Positions 1,000 through 62,554 of a DNA stretch of 64,000 nt are shown piece by piece. The translations under genes and the position numbers were made by a program. Positions within the stretch are counted from its first letter, which is position 1. Each line of letters starts with the position of its first letter. The stretch comes from Dicyema japonicum (lineage: Eukaryota > Animalia > Dicyemida): assembly GCA_011109175.1 (NCBI GenBank), contig RDEW01000001.1:476678-540677 (forward strand), given 5' to 3'. Under the pieces are notes generated by a model that was given only the letters and a program-made list of their open reading frames with translations, was not told the DNA's origin and did not search any database.

Positions 1000-1405
1000 G
1001 AAGACTATTGGGCACAATCTGAGAATGAAGTTGACATCCTCATCGAGGTAGGCCAAGAATGACTCTGCGGTCGTCGTCATACAAAAGGACTTGATAACCT
1101 TTAAAAAAAAATTGAAAACCGCGATTTTAGCGGAAAAGTCGATATTCGGAGTCTTCACAAAATCCCTGGAATCCACCCAACCATTAATTAGCTTAGTGAC
1201 TTCCTCAATTGCCTTCTTCCATACACTATCGAAATATCTACAATCATACAGAAATTTTGAGCCGATGCCACGTCCAATGAGAAGAGCTGTTCAGGATTCT
1301 CGACCCCGCCGAACTCGTCCTTTCCTTTGTCGTCTGGATCACTTAGTTAGTTGAGAACTTTTTATTTCTGTCTCTTTGACCCAGTGATCCTGGAGGTAAT
1401 AATGA
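1000..1405 (+). mobile_element. 3' fragment of Ingi/Vingi-like LINE
   Basis: PRPMRRAV resembles PRPIRKCVG in the 10.5 kb copy. Ends GGATCACTTAG, then the family 3' UTR TTTGACCCAGTGATCCTGGAGG and a TAATAAT tail. Confidence 0.65.
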
Positions 1406-1424
1406 CAATAATAAATTATTATTT

Positions 1425-1500
1425 ATTTATTATTTAATAACCCCGAAAAGGGAACACCAAGAAAGAAGGAGTAATCCAACTAATTAAGTGAGTTGAATTT
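1425..1500 (-). mobile_element. Inverted 3' end of the same LINE family
   Basis: Reverse complement reads CACTTAATTAGTTGG...TTCTTTCTTGGTGTTCCC...GGGGTTATTAAATAATAAATAAAT, similar to the 3' end at 57775-57840. Confidence 0.5.
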
Positions 1501-1505
1501 TCTCG

Positions 1506-1568
1506 TGGCGTCATGTGGTTCACCTTTTGTGGTGGCGCTCAGTGTAATAATACACCAAAAAGAACCAT
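1506..1568 (+). ncRNA. Putative HDV-like ribozyme (degenerate) at LINE 5' end
   Basis: P1 TGGCGTC/GGCGCTC (first pair mismatched), P2 GTGGTTC/GAACCAT, P3 ACC/GGT, L3 TTTTGT, P4 GTGT/ACAC, candidate catalytic C at 1556. Folded by eye. Confidence 0.55.
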
Positions 1569-4420
1569 TTGCTCTTCCCCATCCAGACTCTTATGCCTGG
1601 ATGGTATACCTCAACTGGAAACTCGAGATGTTGTTTGCTCCCCTGGATTCTATTGCTTTCTGGAGATATTGAACAAAACCCCGGACCAAAACCCCTTGTT
1701 ATTATGCAACTCAATGCTAACGGAATAAAAACAAAGATTCTGGAGTTACGATCTTTATTAACGAAGCACAAGATTGACATCTGCCTTATCTAGGAGTCAA
1801 AACTTTTTACAAAGAATACAACCCCACTTTTTCCTTGATACATCTCTATCAGAAAAGGCCGTATCGGACGTGGTGGCGGATTACTCTTATTAATAAAAAC
1901 GGTTTATCTTCGACTATGTAGCTCGCAAGTGGATGATTTAATTTTACACGACAAGACCGCGGAACAAATTTCTATTGATCTTATTAATAGGTCAGAACAT
2001 CTTATTCTAATCAACTTTTACATTCCACCGCCGGGATCCTGTCCTAATAACTATGTTCCGAAGCTCGACAAACTACAAGAAATTCGAAATGTGTTACTAT
2101 GTGGGGATTTCAATGACAAACATCCGCATTGGCTTAGTACTCAGTCGGCAGACAAGAGGGGGAGTCTAATTATCGACTCTCTCAAAAAAATGGTGATTCT
2201 GAATCACCCGAATATGTTCACAAGGACATCTATCCGAAGAAATGACAACCCAACCTCCCCCGACATATCCATTGCTTCCTCTAGGATTGTCCCGAAGATT
2301 TCATGGAACGTCTCCTAGGATTTTTATAGTGATCATAATCCAATCATATTAAAACTGAGCCGATTCAATAACTCGCGTAGAATTAAAGCAACCTTCAAGG
2401 TCTACAAGAAAGCTGACTGGTCGAATTTCAAGCTCTTCATTGACAATAACCTAATACACTTTGATCCCACCTCATTTTGCTCCATCGACAAAGCAGTGGA
2501 CCATCTAAACCATGTAATCCTTCAAGCTGAAAAGTTGTTTGTACCACGTGCAGTTTACAAATCCTACAAGCCTACTCTGGACTCGGAGACTCGTCTCCTC
2601 ATCAAACAAAGAAACTCCCTGAAGATGAATCATCTGCAAACCTCTTCTGATTTGCAAAATATAAAATGCTTAAATCAGAGAAAAGAAAGATAGGGCGTGG
2701 AAGCGCCTATTATCATCTATTGGACATATGAAATCCACGAGTCTTTTATGGAAAACTATTCGTCGAATCAAGCTAAACTTATCAGATGAATCAGAATCTT
2801 TTTCTGCTCCAAATACTGTGCAAGCTAACAACCTAATGAAATATTACGCATCCATAAGCCACAAGGACTTCTCGAAATCCATTCTTGTCACTTTCGGAAT
2901 TTAGTGCCTAAACCAACTTCATGGATCAATCTGTTTACGCATGCCGAGGTCACACAGGCTATAAGATCGATGAAGAGATCTTTTACGTGTGGACCTGACG
3001 GCATCCCGGGAATTTTGTTAAAACACCTTGGTAATGCTGCAATCAATTCAATTACGTCAATTTTTAATTTGTCTTCTAACATGAACGTCATCCCATGCAA
3101 ATGGAAAAACTCACTTATAATACCGATCCTTAAACCAGGAAAACCGAAAACCTTACCTTCTTCCTACCGTCCAATTTCATTAACGTGCGCATTATCGCGC
3201 CTAATGGAGAAACTCGTACTCTGGAAAATTAAACCCCATTTGCCCGACTGCCACTTTCAACATGGTTTCAAATGTGAGCGTTCAACTACGACACATTTGA
3301 CTTCACTGTCTCAATTTATATCAGAAGGGTTCAACGTAGCGAAACGCCATCTACGGACAATAATGGTTTCCTGGATATCCAGAAGGCGTTCGATTCTGTC
3401 TCGAGAATATTACTCACGAAGAAGGTTTTTGACACCACCATTCAGACGGATTTGAAAGATGGATAGCCAATTTTCTCTCCGGAAGAAGAGGACGTGTCTG
3501 TATAGGCCACGCAAGATCGAGGTCCCGTCTCCTACCAAATGGCGTCCCTCAAGGATCGCCCCTTCTCCGGCATTATTCAACTTGTTCCTCAACGATTTAC
3601 CCTGCCCTGGAGGACCAGATTCAATGCTTCTCACTTATGCTGACGACCTAATCATCGCTAGCAGGAACAAATACGTGGGTACAGCAAAATCAGAGCTTCA
3701 GTCACATATTGACGACCTGGGAGCCTGGTTGAAGTTGAATCGTCTCTCCGTATCCAGGGACAAATCAACATATACAATCTTCACCACGGACAGAAAAGAA
3801 AAACATACACTTGATTTGAACATTTTGGAGACTCCTTACCACTACAGACTCGTCCAACTATCCTGGGAGTGACATTTGACCTTTGATGTCATTTTCTCAA
3901 CATGTGAAGAACGTTATGACAAAGGGTCTCAGGAAACTTAATATAATCAAACCGCTCTTGAAGTCAAACCTTCACAGGAATGCGCCCTCGTCGTGTTCAA
4001 TCAACTCCTAAAACCGACGATTGAGTACGCCTGTGCCTCATGGGCCTATGGAGCTTCGATATCAAATTCACTCAAGATCAATACCCTAATTGGAAAACTA
4101 GCACGTCAAACGAATCTACCCCCGATCTTTTCCCTCCAATGCTTGACCACGCCGCAATCAAAAATAATGGCTCCGGCTTCATCTGTCTGTGTGGCCAAGA
4201 AACAAGTCGTTTCTTCCATTCAAGGCTAAAGGCTTCAAATACTCGAAATTTGGGGAAAAACCCCACTCCTCTTCAAACCCTAATGAAAGATGATCGTCGT
4301 TTATTCAGGAAAGCCGTGGGTACTCTGGAGGAACACAGGAAAAACCTCTCGATCCTGTTGAGGCGTACCGGATCACAATAATAAATGCCTCCTTCAGACC
4401 ATCCGTGACCGCTATTATAA
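1506..4420 (+). mobile_element. Full-length but disrupted Ingi/Vingi-like LINE (ribozyme-2A-APE-RT, no RNase H seen), ~2.9 kb
   Basis: LLLSGDIEQNPGP, then APE (QLNANG, GDFN, TSPDIS, SDHNP) and RT (YRPISL, QHGF, GVPQG across a frameshift, LFNLF, YADD). Several stops and frameshifts. Clade call rests on motifs and architecture. Confidence 0.88.
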
Positions 4421-8589: not shown

Positions 8590-10640
8590 ACCTTCGACTG
8601 ACTCCGTCTTCTCCCACTCCCGTCTTTCCAAACTATCACGTCATCAGGCGCGACCGCCCAGCTGGGCGGGGTGGAGGACTGCTTACCCTTATCAAAAAAG
8701 AAATTCCGTACGCAAACGAAACTTTTGTCAACCTCAAGTCTCCGACGTATATATTGGTATTTCAGTCAAGACAAGCATCGGAAACATAAACATATTGAAT
8801 GTGTATGTGCCACCGCCCAACTCTTGCCCCAAGGAATTCAGGTTCTCCCTGTCAGACATCGACAAATCAAAAAATATGTTACTTTGTGGAGACCTAAACG
8901 CAAAGCATCCGACATGGTTCAAGAACCAACCATGCGATGTCAGAGGAAACCAATTGTTATCGAATCTGGATGACCTGATAATATTAAACAACCCTACATT
9001 CAATACAAGGATTCCCTATAGAGCGAATGACATGACATCGTCCCCCGATCTTACTCTTGCCTCACCAAACATCGCAACATTAACAAAATGGACAGTACTA
9101 TACGAGACCAGCAGTGACCATAATCCCGTTATGATTACGTTTGAAGGAAGAGTGTCAATTGTAAAGAAACCTGTTTTATTTACCGACTACAAAAATGTCG
9201 ACTGGAAAAAGTTCTCAAATTTTGTCGACTATTATCTACTTGACTTTCATTTATCCAATTTCAACTCCATCGATAAAGCACTACACTATTTTATTCCCTG
9301 TGGTCCGGACGGAATCCCTGCAATAGTTCTGAAAAACATAGGCCCCTATGCTATCATGGACCTCACAAAATTTTTCAACTTTTCAATCAACGAAAATTGT
9401 ATTCCTTCCATATGGAAGCTATCAAACATACGACCTATTATGAAACCCGGGGGACCAAAGGGATCACCAGCCTCATACAGACCAATATCTCTCCTATGTG
9501 TTACATCAAAAGCTGATTCTTGAACTAATCAAACCATACCTTCCTGATGCACCTTTTCAACACGGATTCAGAAAAAACTCCACAGAAACGCATCTTACAT
9601 GCCTTACAAATTTCATCAAGGATGGACTAAAGCGCAAACCTCATCAGAAGTCTTTGTTATGCTCCATCGATATAGAAAAGGCTTTTGATACTTTCCCAAG
9701 AAAGTTTTTGATAAGGAAGATCTTTACGTCAAAAATTCCAAACAACCTGAAAATCTGGATCGCTAATTTCCTAAATGGAAGAAGAGGAAGAGTAACTGCT
9801 TGAAAAACTAGATCAGTGACCAAGTTCCTTCCAAATAAGATCCCTCAAGGATCTCCACTTTCACCACACCTATTCAACCTATTCCTCCCTTACCAGTGAC
9901 GATACTCTGGTTTGACATATGCGGATGATATAATCGTCGCAGTCAAAGAACAGTGCGTTAATACTGCTGTTTACCGGATACAAGCTTCATTGGAAGATCT
10001 GAACTGTTGGCTCGTTAAGAACATTCTACATACAAGTCTCGAAAAGTCTTATACAATAATTTTCACAACAAACAGAAGATTGACAAACTCCGCTTCATGT
10101 GTAGCCATAAATGGAAACTCAATCCCCACGACCAACTCGGTCAAGATACTGGGCGTAACTTACGACCCACTCTTGACCTTCAGCAAACACATCGACAACG
10201 TCATCTCTTGGGCACAACGAAAGCTAAATTTTGTTAAAACACTCCTTGGACAATATAATGAGTGTTTCAACTCAAATTTGGACTCGCTCTACGTGCAGTA
10301 TATTCAACCGTCTCTAACTTACGGGTGTGCAGCATGGGGAACCAACCTATCAAACAGGAATAAAGAAAAAATCAATACCTTCCAAAAAATAAGGCTTTGC
10401 AAAGGTTTTCTTGGACACCTCTAAACCCTATACCCTTTGAGGAATTAGTGAGGAAAACCGGAGCCTTACTACCCTCCAAAAAAGTTAGAAAACCCCGCCC
10501 AATCCGGAAATGCGTTGGAACCCAGGAAGAACATCGAGCAAGAATGAGATGGCTACTCGAGGCGGCCGGAATCACCTGACGGCTATGTAGTTAATTAATT
10601 AATTTGTCGGTGATTTTTGGTTTTTAATAATAATAATTTG
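8590..10640 (+). mobile_element. 5'-truncated, internally deleted Ingi/Vingi-like LINE
   Basis: APE (RRDR...GGG, GDLNAKH, SPDLTL, SDHNP), RT (YRPISL, QHGF, DIEKAFD, PQGS, YADD), C-terminus LLEAAGIT*, (TAA)n tail. Confidence 0.9.
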
Positions 10641-26300: not shown

Positions 26301-26786
26301 TATTATTTTACAAAAATATTTAGATTTAATTATTTTACAAGATTAAGTGTAATATTGTATTAAAGTTAGTTAAATCGGATTAATGCGTACTATTTGTTCT
26401 AATTACATTGATTACGTCAAACCAATGATGAATTCTTTTATCGATTAATAATGAAACTATAAGAAAATTAACTCTTTTTAGCAGCACCGAATATACCCCA
26501 TGAACTTAAATACGCCTCTAATGTTCAAGTAATGTCTTAAGGGATTCATAAACTTGACCACCAAATCTAAAATCAAATTTTCATTTTTGGATTAACAAAT
26601 TTTTGGAATTCAGCATATTTCTTAGACGAGTAAGCCAAGTGGGTAATTATTAGAATATTGAGGTGTGACGTACATCATTTCTTTTGTTTTTATTTTTTCG
26701 TAGGTAACGTCAGAAATATTGTAGAAACCTTATTCAGGGGATGAAAATATGTAAAATTGTAAGATTATTGAAAATTAGTAAAATGG

Positions 26787-27116
26787 CAACACAGAAAACG
26801 TCACCCTGACCGAACACAGTAAGGATTGGCAGATTAATAACTTTTTCTTTATACTGTGGGTACAGGCTCCGTTGTTGGTTGGTGGAGTGATCTCTCTGGT
26901 TAATTCCGATAACGGACGAGACTAAACCTACCTACTAGTTGTTCAACTTCTTAGAGAGATCAGTGTTTAAAACACTTGAATGTGAGCAATAACAGGTCTG
27001 TGATTGCCCTTTGACGTTCGGGGCTGCACGCAGCTAAGAAAGCATTAGATGTCTTGTTTGGAAAAGTAAGCTAAACCTTAAAATTTTTTTGTGACGGGAA
27101 TCAAGGCTTGTAATTT
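26787..27116 (+). pseudogene. 18S rRNA: 18S rRNA 3'-region fragment (isolated, degenerate)
   Basis: Universal motifs TTGGTGGAGTGAT..CTGGTTAATTCCGATAAC.GACGAGAC, AACTTCTTAGAG, GAGCAATAACAGGTCTGTGAT, GGGGCTGCACGC. Several substitutions; no 5' part. Confidence 0.85.
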
Positions 27117-27339
27117 CACGCGACTTGTTGTGGTATTGAAAAAGATTAACTCTACGTAATCCTTCTGAACAAATATATGAGTTAATTTCAAACGTGACAC
27201 ACGAAGACTTCTGATCAGGATTCCCAAAGATGGCCGTTTATCTGTCGCGAACTGTCTATACGAGTGTATTGAAGGGCAGTCTCTTCGGCCGACTCTAAGG
27301 ATTGGGTAAGATTATTTTACTTCGCTCCAAACACAAAAT

Positions 27340-47975: not shown

Positions 47976-48810
47976 TATTATATCCCCGGGAACACAGGAA
48001 AGAGGAAAAAGTTATCGTCTAATTTAGTGTTCCCGGTGTCAGTGCGTCTTCTTTTGTTTCGACTTTGTCTGTAATCTTTTATGATCGTCCAAAAGGGGGA
48101 AGGTTTGATCATACTTCTGGTAGGCGAAAAACTCATCTTCGAGGCGGTTACCAGAAGATCGCACCATTTTCAAGAATTTTTGTTGTTCATACCGAGATGT
48201 TCCATAACTTTGTATGATCTCTAATTTGTTCCGCGTGGATATTGACAAGGGTGTAATCCAAGCCGTACATGCATGTTCCAGTGTCGGAAGAATACACTGT
48301 TTGTATAATAATTTGAGATGAGAAAGTGAAGATATTGGCGATCTAGCAAAGGTCTTGAGGATCCCCATCTTTTTTTGAACTTTTGAAATTATTGTGTCCA
48401 CATGATGTGTGAACGTCATCAACGGGTCATATGTAACTCCAAGGATTTGATGGGTTCTTATTAACTGGGATAAGCTCTCCATTCCAAGTTAATTTAGGAT
48501 CGAAGGATGTATGTTTCCTGTAGGAGGAGATAATCGCAGTGCTCGACTTCCCAGGGGATATTATCATGTGGTTTTTGAGGAACCATGGGTTCATAATGTC
48601 GAGGGTCTCCTGAACCCTTCGTGCAGTTTCTTTATAGTCTTGGTGTCTTACTACGACAATGAGATGGTCGGCATAAGATAGAAGAATGGTATTTTGGATG
48701 TTTGGATTTGGAAGGTCTCTTGTAAATAAATTGAACAAGGTTGGTGATAAAGAGGATCCTTGAGGGACCTCGTTGGGGAAATATCGTTGTCTTGATTTTC
48801 TATTATTCAT
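47975..48810 (-). mobile_element. Ingi/Vingi-like LINE, 3' third
   Basis: EVPQGSSLSPTLFNLF, SYADH, ILGVTYD, family-type 3' UTR and (TAA)n tail. Confidence 0.85.
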
Positions 48811-55869: not shown

Positions 55870-56460
55870 GTTTATTTATTTATCCCCAAAACCACCAAGA
55901 AAGATAGGTCAAACTAACTAATTAGGTGATCCCAGCCTCCAACAACATCAGAACTCTCTTCGTCTGGTCTACTGATGACCCAACCGCATTCCGAAAGCTC
56001 CTTCTTTTCCTTCTGCATAGGAATTCAATCGGCGTGACTTTTTTATAACCGACCGAAAATCCTCTGCATGGGCTACCTACCTCTTCCTTGAATGGGTTTC
56101 ATATTTCCTTGCAAAAACGTAGGAAACCCTGGCCATTATTCAACGTCTCCTCATCAGAAACGAGGCCACCAATGGAGATGTCAGTGTGGTGCATAATTTT
56201 CCGCCTTAGAGAGTTCAAACGATCCACTCTCGAAGAGGGAATCGCAAATTTTCAGGTGGAGCGGCCATATTCATTGGTATGAACGATGACTTATTGGTAG
56301 ACCTTGTTGACGCAAGCAGCAGTAGGGAAAGAGCTTTGCTTTATGATCGCTTTTAAAATGTTCCATTTCCGAATACCCTTGGCAAGCACCTCCTCCACGT
56401 GACTCGAGAACGTCATCAGAGAGTCGAAAACTATCCCAAGGATCTTACCAAAATTTTGTT
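55870..56460 (-). mobile_element. Ingi/Vingi-like LINE, 3' part
   Basis: KILGIVFDSLMTFSSHV...LLEAGIT*, then TTAGTTAG, the UTR and a TAAA tail. Confidence 0.75.
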
Positions 56461-57129: not shown

Positions 57130-57845
57130 GAAATGCACCATGTCCCTCAAGATTTCAAGCGAAATAACAAACTGGGTGACACTTAGCACAGGAAATGTCA
57201 AGGAAGTATCCCTCTCTCAATTCTTACCCCGAAATCCGTATACAAAGTATCAGATCAATCGAAGGTCCCCATATCCATCATAAGAACCTTTGACCGTTTT
57301 GGAGACTGATAAACAGAAATGTTTCTACTCAACTGGGAGTTGGTGTTCCTTACGACTGTGAAATGATTATTTAATCAGTCTGATCATTCCCTCTTAGGTA
57401 AAGATTGACATAGCTAATGCTTCCAACTTGCGAAAGAGACCAAATGTTTGAAACTTGCCTCCATCTCTGGAGATCATTATTCGATTTTTATAACAGACTT
57501 GGAATCTTCTCGGTTGTATGAGGATAATTATGCTGGAACGGGAATGTGGAACAAAAATACCTCCTCTGCTGACGGAATCTACAACTCGTAGATGTGGTTC
57601 CGGATTTCTCCTCATTTGCGAAATAGATGGACACTCACTAAGCCTTTCACTGTTTCAAAAATTTCCTTCCCCAATAAGCTTCCTCTGCAAGGATCAAAGA
57701 AGGCATTTCCGTTCGACAGTGGTAACAATGGAGACGCAAAGGCTTAGGATGACACATTTGGTTGCGGGAACTGGGATCACCTAACTAGTTGTCATTACTT
57801 TGTCTTTCTTTCTCGGTGATCCCGGGGTTAATAAATAAATTATTA
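57130..57845 (+). mobile_element. Ingi/Vingi-like LINE, decayed 3' part
   Basis: TFD, IIPS, ASNL, ending AGTGIT*. 3' stem-loop CTCGG-TGATC-CCGGG and TAAA tail. Confidence 0.7.
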
Positions 57846-60244: not shown

Positions 60245-60320
60245 CTTGTCGGTCTGGGATTACTTAGTTGAGAACCTTTTATTTCTTTCTCTTTGACCCA
60301 GTGATCCTGGAGGTAATAAT
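60245..60320 (+). mobile_element. Isolated Ingi/Vingi-like 3' end
   Basis: Near-identical to 1335-1403 (GGAT.ACTTAG...TTTGACCCAGTGATCCTGGAGGTAATAAT). Confidence 0.8.
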
Positions 60321-60428
60321 TAACTCAAGGAGGCTTTTAACTTTGTTTTGAGGAATATTATCACACACAAAATATATTTGTTGAACATTGACGCAAACCT
60401 GAAATTATAGTTGGGAAACTTCTTAAGA

Positions 60429-60501
60429 AATTTTCGATGTGGTTCACCTTCACGTGGAGAAAATTGGGTACCAGTATCAAACTGGCAACTAAAAGAACCA
60501 C
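60429..60501 (+). ncRNA. HDV-like self-cleaving ribozyme fold at LINE 5' end
   Basis: P1 AATTTTC/GAAAATT, J1/2 GAT, P2 GTGGTTC/GAACCAC, P3 ACC/GGA (one mismatch), L3 TTCACGT, P1.1 GG (60466-67), P4 CCAGT/ACTGG, J4/2 with CTAA (C60489). Confidence 0.75.
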
Positions 60502-62380
60502 TACTATTCCCCTGTCAACCTTTTCAACGACCTCTGGGAAGTCGGACTGGATGATGGCGGCTATTGAGCGGGCGCGTAGCTTTCGCTCCCAAAGATCGGA
60601 TTGGCTACTTTTAATCCTAGCTGGGACATCGAACAGAACCCCGGGCCCCATAAAAACGGGAAATTCCTTAATATCATGTAATTCAACATACGGCCTCACA
60701 AATCAAATGAAATTTTTGCATTTTTAACTTTCCACAAAATTGATTTCGCCATGCTACAGGAAACGAAACTATCAAAAAAGTCAGTGCTTCCACACTACAA
60801 AGACTACTCAATTGTCCGCCGTAATCTACCAAATTCAAACAGGGGAAACGGTGTTCTCATACTCATACACTAATCTATTCCATTCTCCGATACTTCCTCT
60901 CTGACACTAGCTCTGTTTGAAGATGACGATCACATTGAACTTACTTCTGTCTTGGTGTAAATAAACCACACAAGGTACACATTTGTAAATATTTACATCC
61001 CACCACCAAGTCTCAGTATGAAACATTACTCCTAAAAACTAACCGAATTACAAAAGATTGAAAATGTGATAATCTGCGGAGATCTAAATGCAAAAGATCC
61101 TCTCTGGCTAATCGGCCAAAAGAGTAATGAGAGGGGTTTTCAGATCCTCTCTCAACTAGAACAATTAGTTATCCTCAATGACAGGAAATCACACACTCGA
61201 ACAGCTTCCAGACCTGGAGACTCTAATACATCACCCGACCTCACACTATGTTCTCCATCACTATCTTCGGCGATATCTTGGAGAATTGTATATGACCTCG
61301 GACTATAATCCAATTCTACTGTCAATCAAACTACTCTCGCCTATTGTTAGGCATCAGAAAACTATAACGAATTACAAACGTACAAAATGGGATTCATTCA
61401 GAGAAGAAACAGAAAAATTTCTATCCGACTTTTCCGTTGAGAATTTCAAATCGCTCGACGCCGCAAAGAAATTTTTTAATGAGGTCATCCTCAGTGCCGA
61501 CAAGAAATACATTTCAAGAAGACTCATTGCAGACTATAATCCAACCTTAATAACGAAATTACATAATTAATCAACAAGAGGAAATTGACCGTTGGAACAA
61601 TTTCATCACAAAAATTAACCACCGAACAAAACTAAAGGATTTTTGGAGCACTTTACGTGGAATTCAGTCGAAACAAAATAGAATGGAGACAACCCACGCC
61701 ACCAGTATTGACAAGAATCAAACACCACGTGATTTCACTCATCAGGTAGATATCATAATGGACCACTACGCAAAAGTGAGTCACATAGATATGACCAAAT
61801 GCTCTCGTCCGTGCAAATTGAAAAACGTTCAAACTCCTCAAGGAAAACCGATTGAAATCAGTACGTCGGATGTCCAAAAACTCTCCTGACAAAGAGCTTG
61901 ATGGAATCTGTATTTAAAGCACCTGGGAATGCAAGGACTCAAAGCAACAACAGACATAATTTCTGTGTCCATCAACACCTACAGAATTTCTGCACTATGA
62001 AAAAAATCCAAAATAATCCCAATCCTGAAGCCCAAGAAAGATCCTTCGGAACCGGGATTTTTCAGACCAATTTCACTACTATCTGTAGTATCGAAGATTG
62101 TTGAACGTGTTGTACTGAAACTAATATCGAAGTATCTTCCCTTCCCTGATTTTCAACATGGCTTTCGTCCATAATACTCAATCTGGAGAGTTCCAGCCAC
62201 CATTGCCACTTGAGGCCATGATATGAATGAACTATAGAACGCGCCAGTCACTCGACCGATACGTGCTTGTGTGGGGTCGAAGGAGGAGCATCGGGCCAAG
62301 ATGAGGTCCCTGCTAGAGCGTGCTGGAATCACGTGATTAGTTAGTTTGTGCAACCATGGTCTCTGGTGTTGTTATTATTA
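60429..62380 (+). mobile_element. Ingi/Vingi-like LINE with 5' ribozyme and 2A; most of RT deleted
   Basis: LILAG-DIEQNPGP (1-nt deletion), APE (QETKL, GDLNAK, SPDLTL), QHGFRP, then a jump to RPIRACVG...LLERAGIT*. Confidence 0.9.
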
Positions 62381-62554
62381 GTGATGTGGGTTTCGAAGGT
62401 TTTGGTTCTGCTTGTACCTTCTTAAAAATTCCATGTCATTATCATTATTACCAAAAAATAAAAAAAGTCATAAATAGTTCAACGTCCACAACAGACACCT
62501 GCCTCATTGTTAAGCATTGAAATTCATGCTGGATTTGGATCATCTGACAGAATG

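What the first reader, a model, noticed from the sequence alone, without database searches (positions are those of the whole stretch)
60429..62380. L1Tc/ingi-type retroelement in an animal: 5' HDV-like ribozyme + 2A StopGo leader + APE-RT + structured 3' tail
Seen: two copies (1506-4420 and 60429-62380) start with an HDV-like fold, then a ~30-codon leader ending DIEQNPGP, then APE and RT. About a dozen further fragments of the lineage are in the window. Known: trypanosomatid L1Tc/ingi carry a 5' 77-nt HDV-like ribozyme, L1Tc has an N-terminal 2A, and the related Vingi clade is ~3 kb without RNase H. Inference: this is an Ingi/Vingi-type family that self-cleaves out of read-through transcripts and recodes its own translation. 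I do not know of a description in a host of this type.
Basis: partly seen in the sequence, partly recalled or inferred. Interest (0 to 1): 0.88.

Follow-up and report, generated by a model that had tools for sequence, protein, structure and literature searches.

The report
Ribozyme-like head plus 2A LINE family
Two dead copies of a very abundant jumping gene (LINE) of a dicyemid parasite start with a conserved RNA knot shaped like hepatitis-delta-type self-cutting RNAs. The knot holds the start codon and leads into a 2A "ribosome-skipping" peptide, a design known from trypanosome LINEs; self-cutting is untested and doubtful for one of the two families.

Summary
Both copies carry an exact DIEQNPGP 2A motif (0 expected by chance). 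Both begin with a P1-P2-P3-P4 nested double pseudoknot, followed by APE and RT remnants.

In the whole genome (67.5 Mb, 377 scaffolds, matching Dicyema japonicum) at least 10 related families share the head:
- P2 and P3 are invariant.
- P1 and P4 differ between families but stay complementary.
- The AUG lies inside the fold, in frame with the 2A.

Two metagenomic relatives have a homologous head with compensatory P2 changes. A conserved 3' stem plus a (TAA)n tail closes the elements.

Limits:
- Rfam gives only a sub-threshold HDV hit.
- No RNA data were available.
- Copies of family B (copy 2) start at P1 +1, as a ribozyme predicts. Family A (copy 1) keeps 4-12 inherited bases upstream of P1.
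- The intact ORF has no RNase H, so it is not Ingi proper. "Vingi-like" fits but could not be tested against named references.
- The "octopus" relatives lie on a scaffold that looks dicyemid.

2A in animal LINEs, HDV-like ribozymes at LINE 5' ends, and both together in L1Tc are already published. The scan has noted this architecture many times elsewhere in this genome. Verdict: new member of a known kind, moderate interest.

The parts
1405..1491 (-). Inverted 3' UTR plus (TAA)n-type tail of family A, abutting the 5' end of copy 1. Together with copy 1 this has the layout of a twin-priming or inversion product.
   Evidence: It is the reverse complement of the 3' UTR found after GGGATCAC in six other full-length A copies. 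Contigs of other copies join 4371 to 1491 on opposite strands.
1495..1506 (+). 12-nt inherited leader GAATTTTCTCGT upstream of P1 in young family A.
   Evidence: The leader, or its 3' 8-11 nt, is present in about 19 independent A copies with unrelated flanks. No alternative P1 partner was found for it.
1507..1568 (+). Copy 1 head, an HDV-type double pseudoknot: P1 1507-1512/1534-1539, P2 1515-1520/1563-1568, P3 1522-1524/1531-1533, P4 1542-1546/1551-1555, candidate catalytic C1556. The start codon is 1513-1515.
   Evidence: Constrained folding and a descriptor scan. No Rfam hit.
1665..1688 (+). 2A motif DIEQNPGP of copy 1.
   Evidence: Exact pattern match, 0 expected. It is in frame with the AUG in better copies.
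1689..4376 (+). Decayed APE-RT ORF of copy 1: APE about 1700-2350, RT about 2990-3900 with YADD, ORF end at GGATCAC 4370-4376. It has many stops and frameshifts.
   Evidence: Translation. tblastn to the intact family C ORF covers aa 46-868. Homology to other A copies ends at 4376.
60429..60501 (+). Copy 2 head (family B): P1 60429-60435/60459-60465, P2 60439-60444/60496-60501, P3 60446-60448/60456-60458 with L3 UUCACGU, P4 60471-60475/60481-60485, candidate catalytic C60486. The start codon is 60437-60439.
   Evidence: Rfam HDV-F-prausnitzii full-length alignment at 20.4 bits, below the cut-off. About 20 B copies with unrelated flanks start at (A)AATTTTC, that is at P1 +1 within 1-2 nt.
60625..60648 (+). 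2A motif DIEQNPGP of copy 2. The upstream part of its 2A is degraded and frameshifted from the AUG.
60649..62181 (+). Decayed APE and N-terminal RT of copy 2, broken at 62181.
   Evidence: tblastn. Genome matches split at 62181/62182 and none bridge the junction.
62182..62381 (+). 3'-terminal module: the last roughly 30 codons (..EEHRAKMRSLLERAGIT, stop 62334-62336), a short 3' UTR and an (ATT)n-type tail. It is either the 3' end of the same element after an internal deletion or a separate truncated copy.
   Evidence: At least 651 candidate genome matches ending at about 62377-62383. Translation.
1335..1420 (+). 3' stem-loop (GGAUCACU...AGUGAUCC) plus tail of a related family, lying just upstream of copy 1. 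A like module at 60256-60325 lies upstream of copy 2. Others are at 57773-57831 (+), 10568-10627 (+), about 55880-55933 (-) and about 47980-48034 (-).
   Evidence: z-scores -2.2 to -2.8. There are compensatory variants of the stem.

Best explanation
These are two dead copies of a single-ORF, RNase-H-less APE-RT LINE lineage. It has thousands of copies in a dicyemid genome that matches Dicyema japonicum by assembly statistics.

The element RNA begins with a roughly 65-75-nt nested double pseudoknot of the HDV-ribozyme type, and its J1/2-P2 region contains the start codon. Translation from that AUG makes a 58-71-aa leader whose first codons are dictated by the RNA fold. The leader ends in a canonical 2A (GD[VI]ExNPG|P), so ribosome skipping would release the enzyme starting 5-8 residues before the APE domain. 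The RNA ends in a conserved stem formed between the last codons (GGGAUCAC) and the 3' UTR, followed by a (TAA)n tail. This stem is probably the RT's recognition site.

[quoted passage not shown] It trims read-through transcripts to the element's first base, and may also help translation of the uncapped product, as in R2 and L1Tc. This fits family B (copy 2). In family A (copy 1) the fold is kept, but the productive RNA starts upstream of it, so cleavage there is weak, lost or dispensable.

Shown: the anatomy, helix covariation, the frame relations and the 5'-end positions.
Inferred: cleavage, 2A activity and the role of the 3' stem.
For: - Motif: exact 2A twice, 0 expected by chance.
- Head abundance: the pattern GTGGTTCNCC..AGAACCA has 192 genome matches against 0 for the reversed control.
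- Helix covariation: at least 10 families share P2 and P3 but have different, internally complementary P1 and P4 helices. P1 examples are AAUUUUC/GAAAAUU, AAUCGUC/GACGAUU, AAUGCC/GGCAUU, AAUGAC/GUCAUU, GCGUGC/GCACGU and GGCGUC/GGCGCU. P4 has about 10 different sequences.
- Own 5' and 3' P1 strands pair better than cross-family pairings (10 of 20000 permutations).
- Synonymous positions of the codons in P2 and P3 never vary, although the RTs are only about 50% identical.
- Rfam aligns copy 2 over the whole HDV model with P1, P3 and P4 in place.
- The 5' ends of families B, H, G and I coincide with P1 +1.
- The AUG is in frame with 2A in families A, B, C and G.
- An intact 935-aa ORF has APE and RVT_1 only.
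- Relatives L121 and L122 (45% RT identity) have a homologous head (GCC-UUCACGA-GGU-GGUGGC) with compensatory P2 (GGGA/UCCC against GAAGG/CCUUC).
- The 3' stem has compensatory variants (GGGAACAC/GUGUUCCC; GGAAUCACC/GGUGAUUYU).
- Precedents: L1Tc carries a ribozyme plus 2A; R2, RTE and others carry ribozymes.
Against: - No Rfam family reaches its threshold, and nine other family heads give no HDV hit at all.
- Families A, C, D and F inherit 4-12 nt upstream of P1. The youngest and most successful family (A, up to 99% identical copies) always does. The twin-priming layout of copy 1 independently places the RNA 5' end at GAAUUUUC.
- The C expected after P4 is ambiguous in families C and H and absent in I. 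P1 is only 4-6 bp in several families. P1.1 cannot be assessed.
- Thermodynamic z-scores of the nested part are weak (-0.6 to -2.2).
- No RNA reads were available.
- P2 and P3 never covary, so they are supported only by invariance within Dicyema and by the two metagenomic relatives.
Confidence: 0.6

Rival explanations
1. The head is a conserved structured RNA that no longer self-cleaves, or never did, in most of these families. Its selected role would be something else: cap-independent translation initiation at the AUG embedded in it, binding of the element's own protein, or 5'-end handling during integration. The element's 5' end would be set by transcription initiation.
For: - Inherited 4-12-nt leaders upstream of P1 in families A, C, D and F, including the most recently amplified family.
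- Family I lacks P4 and any C in J4/2 yet keeps P1, P2 and P3.
- P2 and P3 are invariant in sequence, suggesting a sequence-specific partner.
- No Rfam-level match.
Against: - Families B, H, G and I begin at P1 +1 in many independent insertions, as a 5' cut predicts.
- The topology, helix sizes, the L3 sequence and the C after P4 fit HDV-like ribozymes.
- The same position and function are documented in six LINE clades.
Confidence: 0.3
2. There is no functional RNA fold. The conservation reflects coding constraint on the leader (MWFT..KRT) and/or a DNA-level internal promoter, and the helices are chance.
For: - The invariant blocks encode MWFT and KRT.
- L1Tc's first 77 nt are also a promoter.
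- Folding z-scores are modest.
Against: - Coding or promoter constraint cannot explain P1 and P4 changing sequence while staying complementary in about 10 families, nor the compensatory P2 in L121 and L122.
- Synonymous sites in the invariant blocks are frozen.
Confidence: 0.05
3. Clade rival: the lineage belongs not to Ingi/Vingi but to another RNase-H-less 2A-bearing clade (CR1, L2, Rex1 or Crack), which also have microsatellite tails and 3' stem-loops.
For: - 2A occurs in Rex1, Crack, L2, L2A and CR1 as well as Ingi. None was detected in Vingi.
- A 3' stem-loop plus a microsatellite tail is typical of 'stringent' CR1/L2-type LINEs (my own knowledge).
- The deep nodes of the tree are unresolved.
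Against: - The best full-length relatives outside the RNase-H-less clade carry RNase H and often 2A, and include Diplonema, a euglenozoan.
- The size (about 2.9 kb, ORF about 935 aa) and the production of 5'+3' deletion derivatives match what is described for Vingi.
Confidence: 0.3

Closest known systems
L1Tc / ingi of trypanosomatids (Pr77 / L1TcRz HDV-like ribozyme plus N-terminal 2A)
   Same: The order of parts is the same: an HDV-like fold at the extreme 5' end, a 2A just before the APE domain, a single long ORF with APE and RT, and non-autonomous 5'+3' deletion derivatives.
   Different: - L1Tc/ingi ORFs are about 1,600 aa and carry RNase H. The Dicyema ORF is about 935 aa and has none.
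- The tail here is (TAA)n after a 3' stem, not poly(A).
- Here the AUG sits inside the fold.
- Cleavage and promoter activity are shown for L1Tc and untested here.
- No trypanosome sequence could be fetched for comparison.
Vingi clade (Kojima et al. 2011; Vingi-1_ACar)
   Same: Compact, about 3 kb, single ORF with APE and RT and no RNase H. It is described as sister to Ingi, gives many internal-deletion derivatives, and a roughly 74-nt 5' module is reused in SINEs.
   Different: [quoted passage not shown]
- No 2A was detected in Vingi.
- Membership was not tested here, for lack of reference sequences.
HDV-like ribozymes of R2, RTE and other LINEs (Eickbush 2010; Ruminski 2011)
   Same: A nested double pseudoknot at the 5' end of a LINE RNA. 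It is proposed to process co-transcripts and to support translation of the downstream ORF.
   Different: - Those ribozymes are shown to cleave; this one is not.
- Here the coding sequence starts inside the fold and is followed by 2A.
- Several families keep bases 5' of P1.
2A-bearing APE-type LINEs of animals (Odon et al. 2013, PMC3708506)
   Same: [quoted passage not shown] One Ingi-clade element of the mollusc Aplysia is included.
   Different: That paper does not mention ribozymes (0 occurrences) and has no dicyemid data.
Twister-variant ribozymes of Schistosoma mansoni non-LTR retrotransposons (PMC8501958)
   Same: A self-cleaving RNA at a LINE end in a parasitic spiralian.
   Different: A different ribozyme class. 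No twister or hammerhead match occurs in this window.

Membership tests
HDV-like self-cleaving ribozyme | Nested double pseudoknot with P1, P2, P3 and P4 in the canonical order and sizes | tested here: met
   Both window copies and at least 10 genome families show it. The Rfam HDV model aligns end to end on copy 2.
HDV-like self-cleaving ribozyme | Score at or above Rfam's gathering threshold for an HDV-type family | tested here: not met
   20.4 bits against 44 for copy 2. There is no hit for copy 1 or for nine other family heads.
HDV-like self-cleaving ribozyme | Catalytic cytosine in J4/2 directly after P4 | tested here: inconclusive
   A C follows P4 in A, B, D, F and K. It is one base later in E and G, ambiguous in C and H, and absent in I.
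HDV-like self-cleaving ribozyme | P1.1 mini-helix and a G.U pair at the base of P1 | tested here: inconclusive
   G.U is at the P1 base in A, C, D and K, and A-U in B, H and I. Possible 2-bp P1.1 pairings exist but are not testable by covariation (hand inspection).
HDV-like self-cleaving ribozyme | Cleavage immediately 5' of P1, so element 5' ends lie at P1 +1 | tested here: inconclusive
   Genomic 5' ends lie at P1 +1 within 2 nt in B (about 20 copies), H, G and I. They lie 4-12 nt upstream in A, C, D and F. Cleavage itself is not testable here and there are no RNA runs.
2A / StopGo recoding peptide | [quoted passage not shown] | tested here: met
   LLLSGDIEQNPGP (A), LLILAGDIEQNPGP (B), LLTSGDVEQNPGP (C), LLTSGDIELNPGP (G). 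Skipping activity is not testable here.
APE-type non-LTR retrotransposon | N-terminal APE endonuclease plus an RT domain in one ORF; dispersed, 5'-truncated copies | tested here: met
   Pfam Exo_endo_phos and Exo_endo_phos_2 plus RVT_1. There are 4570 RT candidates in the genome.
Ingi clade | RNase H domain downstream of RT; ORF about 1,600 aa | tested here: not met
   The intact 935-aa and 1025-aa ORFs have no RNase H. All 19 members of the surrounding starred clade lack it.
Ingi / Vingi group | RT groups with Repbase Ingi/Vingi references in a phylogeny | not testable with these tools
   No named Ingi, L1Tc or Vingi protein could be retrieved. The tree of unnamed relatives leaves the link to the RNase-H-bearing 2A clade unresolved.
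Vingi clade | About 3 kb, single ORF of about 1,000 aa with APE and RT, no RNase H | tested here: met
   The element is about 2.88 kb plus 3' UTR. These features are shared with other clades, so they do not decide membership.

The most novel reading that the evidence does not exclude
The invariant P2/P3 pseudoknot core holding the start codon may not primarily be a ribozyme. It could be a new kind of LINE 5' module that recruits ribosomes, or the element's own protein, to an RNA whose 5' end is made in another way, with 2A evolved to discard the peptide that the RNA structure forces the ORF to encode. Self-cleavage would then be ancestral or optional. The same head would define the whole RNase-H-less '2A-LINE' (Vingi-like) clade across marine eukaryotes.
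Probability: 0.25. Interest if true: 0.7.

Novelty: new member of a known kind. Interest (0 to 1): 0.45.

Why it matters
If the head cleaves, HDV-like ribozymes extend to a seventh LINE clade, RNase-H-less and possibly Vingi. They also extend to Dicyemida, where these elements make up a large part of a 49%-repeat genome.

The L1Tc design (ribozyme, then 2A, then APE-RT) would then be old and widespread rather than a trypanosome peculiarity.

The families that keep the fold but not a P1 +1 start offer a natural experiment. They could separate cleavage from other roles of the fold, such as translation or RNP assembly.

Vingi-type elements are now used as gene-insertion tools with their native 5' UTR retained (PMC13708176). 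What that 5' module does therefore has practical interest.

Tried and rejected
- Rfam at gathering threshold on the whole window gave only an SSU rRNA fragment. At E-value threshold, copy 1 and 20 other heads gave no HDV hit.
- Sequencing runs: four holders, all Logan contigs from one 2019 study, none on record as RNA. Laying them gave no 5'-end information.
- Named clade references could not be obtained. Three protein searches, the ESM Atlas and the PDB gave no Ingi, L1Tc or Vingi sequence. The Vingi paper PMC3002237 is not held.
- My descriptor scan found no HDV-type fold upstream of the 2A in the more distant relatives L118 and L119. About 15% of shuffles give a hit, so the scan alone is weak evidence.
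- Host-parasite horizontal transfer from or to octopus: considered and rejected as the simplest reading. The 'Octopus sinensis' protein P0073 (82% identical RT piece) lies on scaffold VCDQ01001777.1. Its importin gene there has 32- and 40-bp introns, shares an intron position with the D. japonicum orthologue (56-73% aa identity), and sits among three LINE 3' ends of this lineage. That points to dicyemid DNA in the octopus assembly.
- An alternative P1 for the 12-nt leader of family A: none found.
- Target-site duplications for family B could not be assessed.
- A covariance model was not built, because the MAFFT alignment was not in structural register across families.
Full report
**What is there**

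The window is G000:C1:476678-540677 of a 67.5-Mb, 377-contig assembly. Those figures are exactly those published for Dicyema japonicum, whose genome is 49% repeats with introns averaging 38 bp (PMC6736024). The degenerate 2A pattern matches exactly twice, at 1665-1687 and 60625-60647, and never in shuffles. Both sites are followed by decayed APE and RT sequence.

- Copy 1 (family A) runs from about 1495 to 4376.
- Copy 2 (family B) runs from 60429 to 62181. A roughly 200-nt 3'-terminal module then continues to about 62381. No other genomic copy shares the 62181/62182 junction.
- Neither copy is intact.

**The 5' fold**

Copy 2 folds as follows:
- P1 AAUUUUC/GAAAAUU
- J1/2 holding the AUG
- P2 GUGGUU/AACCAC
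- P3 (A)CC/GG(A) with L3 UUCACGU
- P4 CCAGU/ACUGG
- then a C and an A-rich J4/2

Rfam aligns 60429-60495 to the whole HDV-F-prausnitzii model with P1, P3 and P4 in place, but at 20.4 bits against a cut-off of 44.

Copy 1 has the same topology with a different P1 (GGCGUC/GGCGCU, G.U at its base) and a different P4 (GUGUA/UACAC). It has no Rfam hit.

**Genome-wide evidence for the fold**

The 5' regions have at least 218 (A) and at least 148 (B) candidate matches. The pattern GTGGTTCNCC-N20-50-AGAACCA occurs 192 times, against 0 for the reversed control.

After fetching upstream sequence for 40 diverse hits, at least 10 families emerge. All share P2 and P3 letter for letter, but their P1 and P4 helices differ:
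- P1: AAUUUUC/GAAAAUU (B), AAUCGUC/GACGAUU (H), AAUGCC/GGCAUU (I), AAUGAC/GUCAUU (G), GCGUGC/GCACGU (K), GGCGUC/GGCGCU (A), GCGUC/GGCGU (C, D).
- P4: about ten unrelated hairpin sequences at the same place.

Pairing each family's 5' strand with its own 3' strand beats random pairings (10 of 20000 permutations).

The invariant blocks encode MWFT and KRT, yet their synonymous positions never vary, although the RTs are only about 50% identical. That points to selection on the nucleic acid.

Two metagenomic relatives, L121 and L122 (45% RT identity, with 2A leaders), carry a recognisably homologous head (GCCAUC...GGAGCC-UUCACGA-GGU-GGUGGC). Their P2 differs between them and stays complementary (GGGA/UCCC against GAAGG/CCUUC).

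The fold is therefore a real, conserved RNA structure of the HDV type. Folding energies of the nested part alone are unremarkable.

**Does it cut?**

This could not be tested. Only DNA-like contig runs hold the sequence. The indirect test is where independent insertions begin.

- Family B copies, about 20 with unrelated flanks, begin at (A)AAUUUUC, that is at P1 +1 within 1-2 nt. Families H, G and I behave likewise.
- Families C, D, F and old A all carry AGCGU or AACGU upstream of P1.
- Young family A, the most recently amplified (copies up to 99% identical), carries GAAUUUUCUCGU.

Copy 1 adds an independent marker. An inverted family A 3' UTR and tail (about 1405-1491) abuts its 5' end. This is the layout expected from twin priming, and it again places the RNA 5' end at GAAUUUUC. 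I found no alternative P1 for that leader.

The 5' strand retained by C and D would pair 8 bp with the K-type 3' strand. This suggests that their leader is the remnant of a longer ancestral P1. Self-cleavage is thus plausible for B-type heads and doubtful or dispensable for A-type heads.

**Coding design**

The AUG (1513-1515; 60437-60439) lies in J1/2 and P2. In better copies it opens a frame that runs into the 2A:
- 59 aa in family A
- 71 aa in family B
- 58 aa in family C

The APE domain begins 5-8 residues after NPG|P. One family C copy has an intact 935-aa ORF with APE and RVT_1 and no RNase H. Another family has a 1025-aa ORF with a mutated 2A, NTGP. I used the intact ORF only as a search query.

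My inference is that 2A lets the element discard a leader whose sequence is dictated by the RNA fold.

**3' end**

Normal copies end with a stem between the last codons (GGGAUCAC[C]) and the 3' UTR ([G]GUGAUCCC), then GGGG(U)UAA and a (TAA)n or (TAAA)n tail. Compensatory variants exist: GGGAACAC/GUGUUCCC, GGAAUCACC/GGUGAUUYU and GGAUCACU/AGUGAUCC.

Copy 1's own 3' UTR is displaced, and copy 2's stem is weak. Both copies sit just downstream of tails of older copies (1335-1420; 60256-60325).

**Clade**

There are 4570 RT candidates in the genome. In an RT tree of 66 sequences, the Dicyema ORFs fall in a starred 19-member clade. All its members lack RNase H, and most members with a complete N-terminus carry 2A.

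A second group carries RNase H, often 2A, and includes Diplonema. Its relation to the first clade is unresolved.

This fits 'Vingi-like, related to Ingi' but does not show it, because no named reference could be fetched. The element is not Ingi proper.

**Literature**

- 2A in the N-terminal region of animal APE-type LINEs is published, including an Ingi-clade element of Aplysia. None was found in Vingi, and ribozymes are not mentioned (PMC3708506).
[quoted passage not shown] RTE, Ingi, Vingi and R2 are the clades that make 5'+3' bipartite derivatives (PMC5786205).
- L1Tc combines both features.
- The dicyemid genome paper mentions only 'LINE-1 ORF2' copies.

**Correction to earlier notes of this scan**

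The scan has flagged this same architecture many times on other pieces of this genome. Some of those notes call the host or its relatives 'octopus'.

The Octopus sinensis protein P0073 that matches at 82% lies on a 482-kb scaffold. Only the 1.3-kb LINE fragment there matches D. japonicum DNA (about 80% identity). However, the neighbouring importin gene has 32- and 40-bp introns and shares an intron position with the D. japonicum orthologue (56-73% aa identity). Three LINE 3' ends of this lineage lie within 29 kb. The scaffold is most simply DNA of another dicyemid within the octopus assembly, not evidence of octopus LINEs or of horizontal transfer.

**Verdict**

This is a new member of a known kind. 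Its most interesting aspect is that the fold is conserved even where the cleavage-defined 5' end is not.

Noticed in passing
window 26778-27172 (+): A degenerate fragment of eukaryotic SSU rRNA (model positions 1178-1606, 146 bits) sits alone in repeat-rich DNA. It is presumably an rRNA pseudogene or a retroposed piece.
   Followed up: no
L120 (Octopus sinensis assembly GCA_006345805.1, scaffold VCDQ01001777.1:385235-414718): This scaffold, annotated as octopus, carries an importin-alpha gene with 32- and 40-bp introns and a shared intron position with the D. japonicum orthologue. It also carries three 3' ends and one 1.3-kb fragment of this LINE lineage. It is probably dicyemid contamination of the octopus assembly. 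The gene model P0073 fuses an RT fragment to importin.
   Followed up: partly
window 1405-1491 with 1495-4376: Copy 1 has the layout of a twin-priming (or inversion) product. Its 3' UTR and tail lie inverted against its own 5' end, and the body ends at GGATCAC followed by AATAATAA.
   Followed up: yes
window 1335-1420 and 60256-60325: Both full-headed copies lie about 75-105 nt downstream of the 3' stem-loop and (TAA)n tail of an older related element. This suggests preferential insertion into or beside existing AT-rich tails.
   Followed up: no
L094 (G000:C79:52426-52832) and L095: Family K heads have an enlarged L3 containing GUAAGUAU...AG, which looks like a tiny dicyemid-type intron inside the fold. 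In this family P1 uses the AGCGUGC strand, which is only a leader in families C, D and F.
   Followed up: no
L037, L042, L045 (three loci): Chimeric heads: a partial A-like head (GTGCGTC ATGTGATTCACC ATCTC) is fused upstream of a complete B head. This is evidence of template switching between family RNAs at their 5' ends, and a possible origin of the B-like GAAUUUUC leader of young family A.
   Followed up: no
L114 (G000:C12:47300-51300): A related family has an intact 1025-aa ORF whose 2A is mutated to GDVETNTGP and whose leader lacks the MWFT head. The head and 2A are therefore not universal in the lineage.
   Followed up: no
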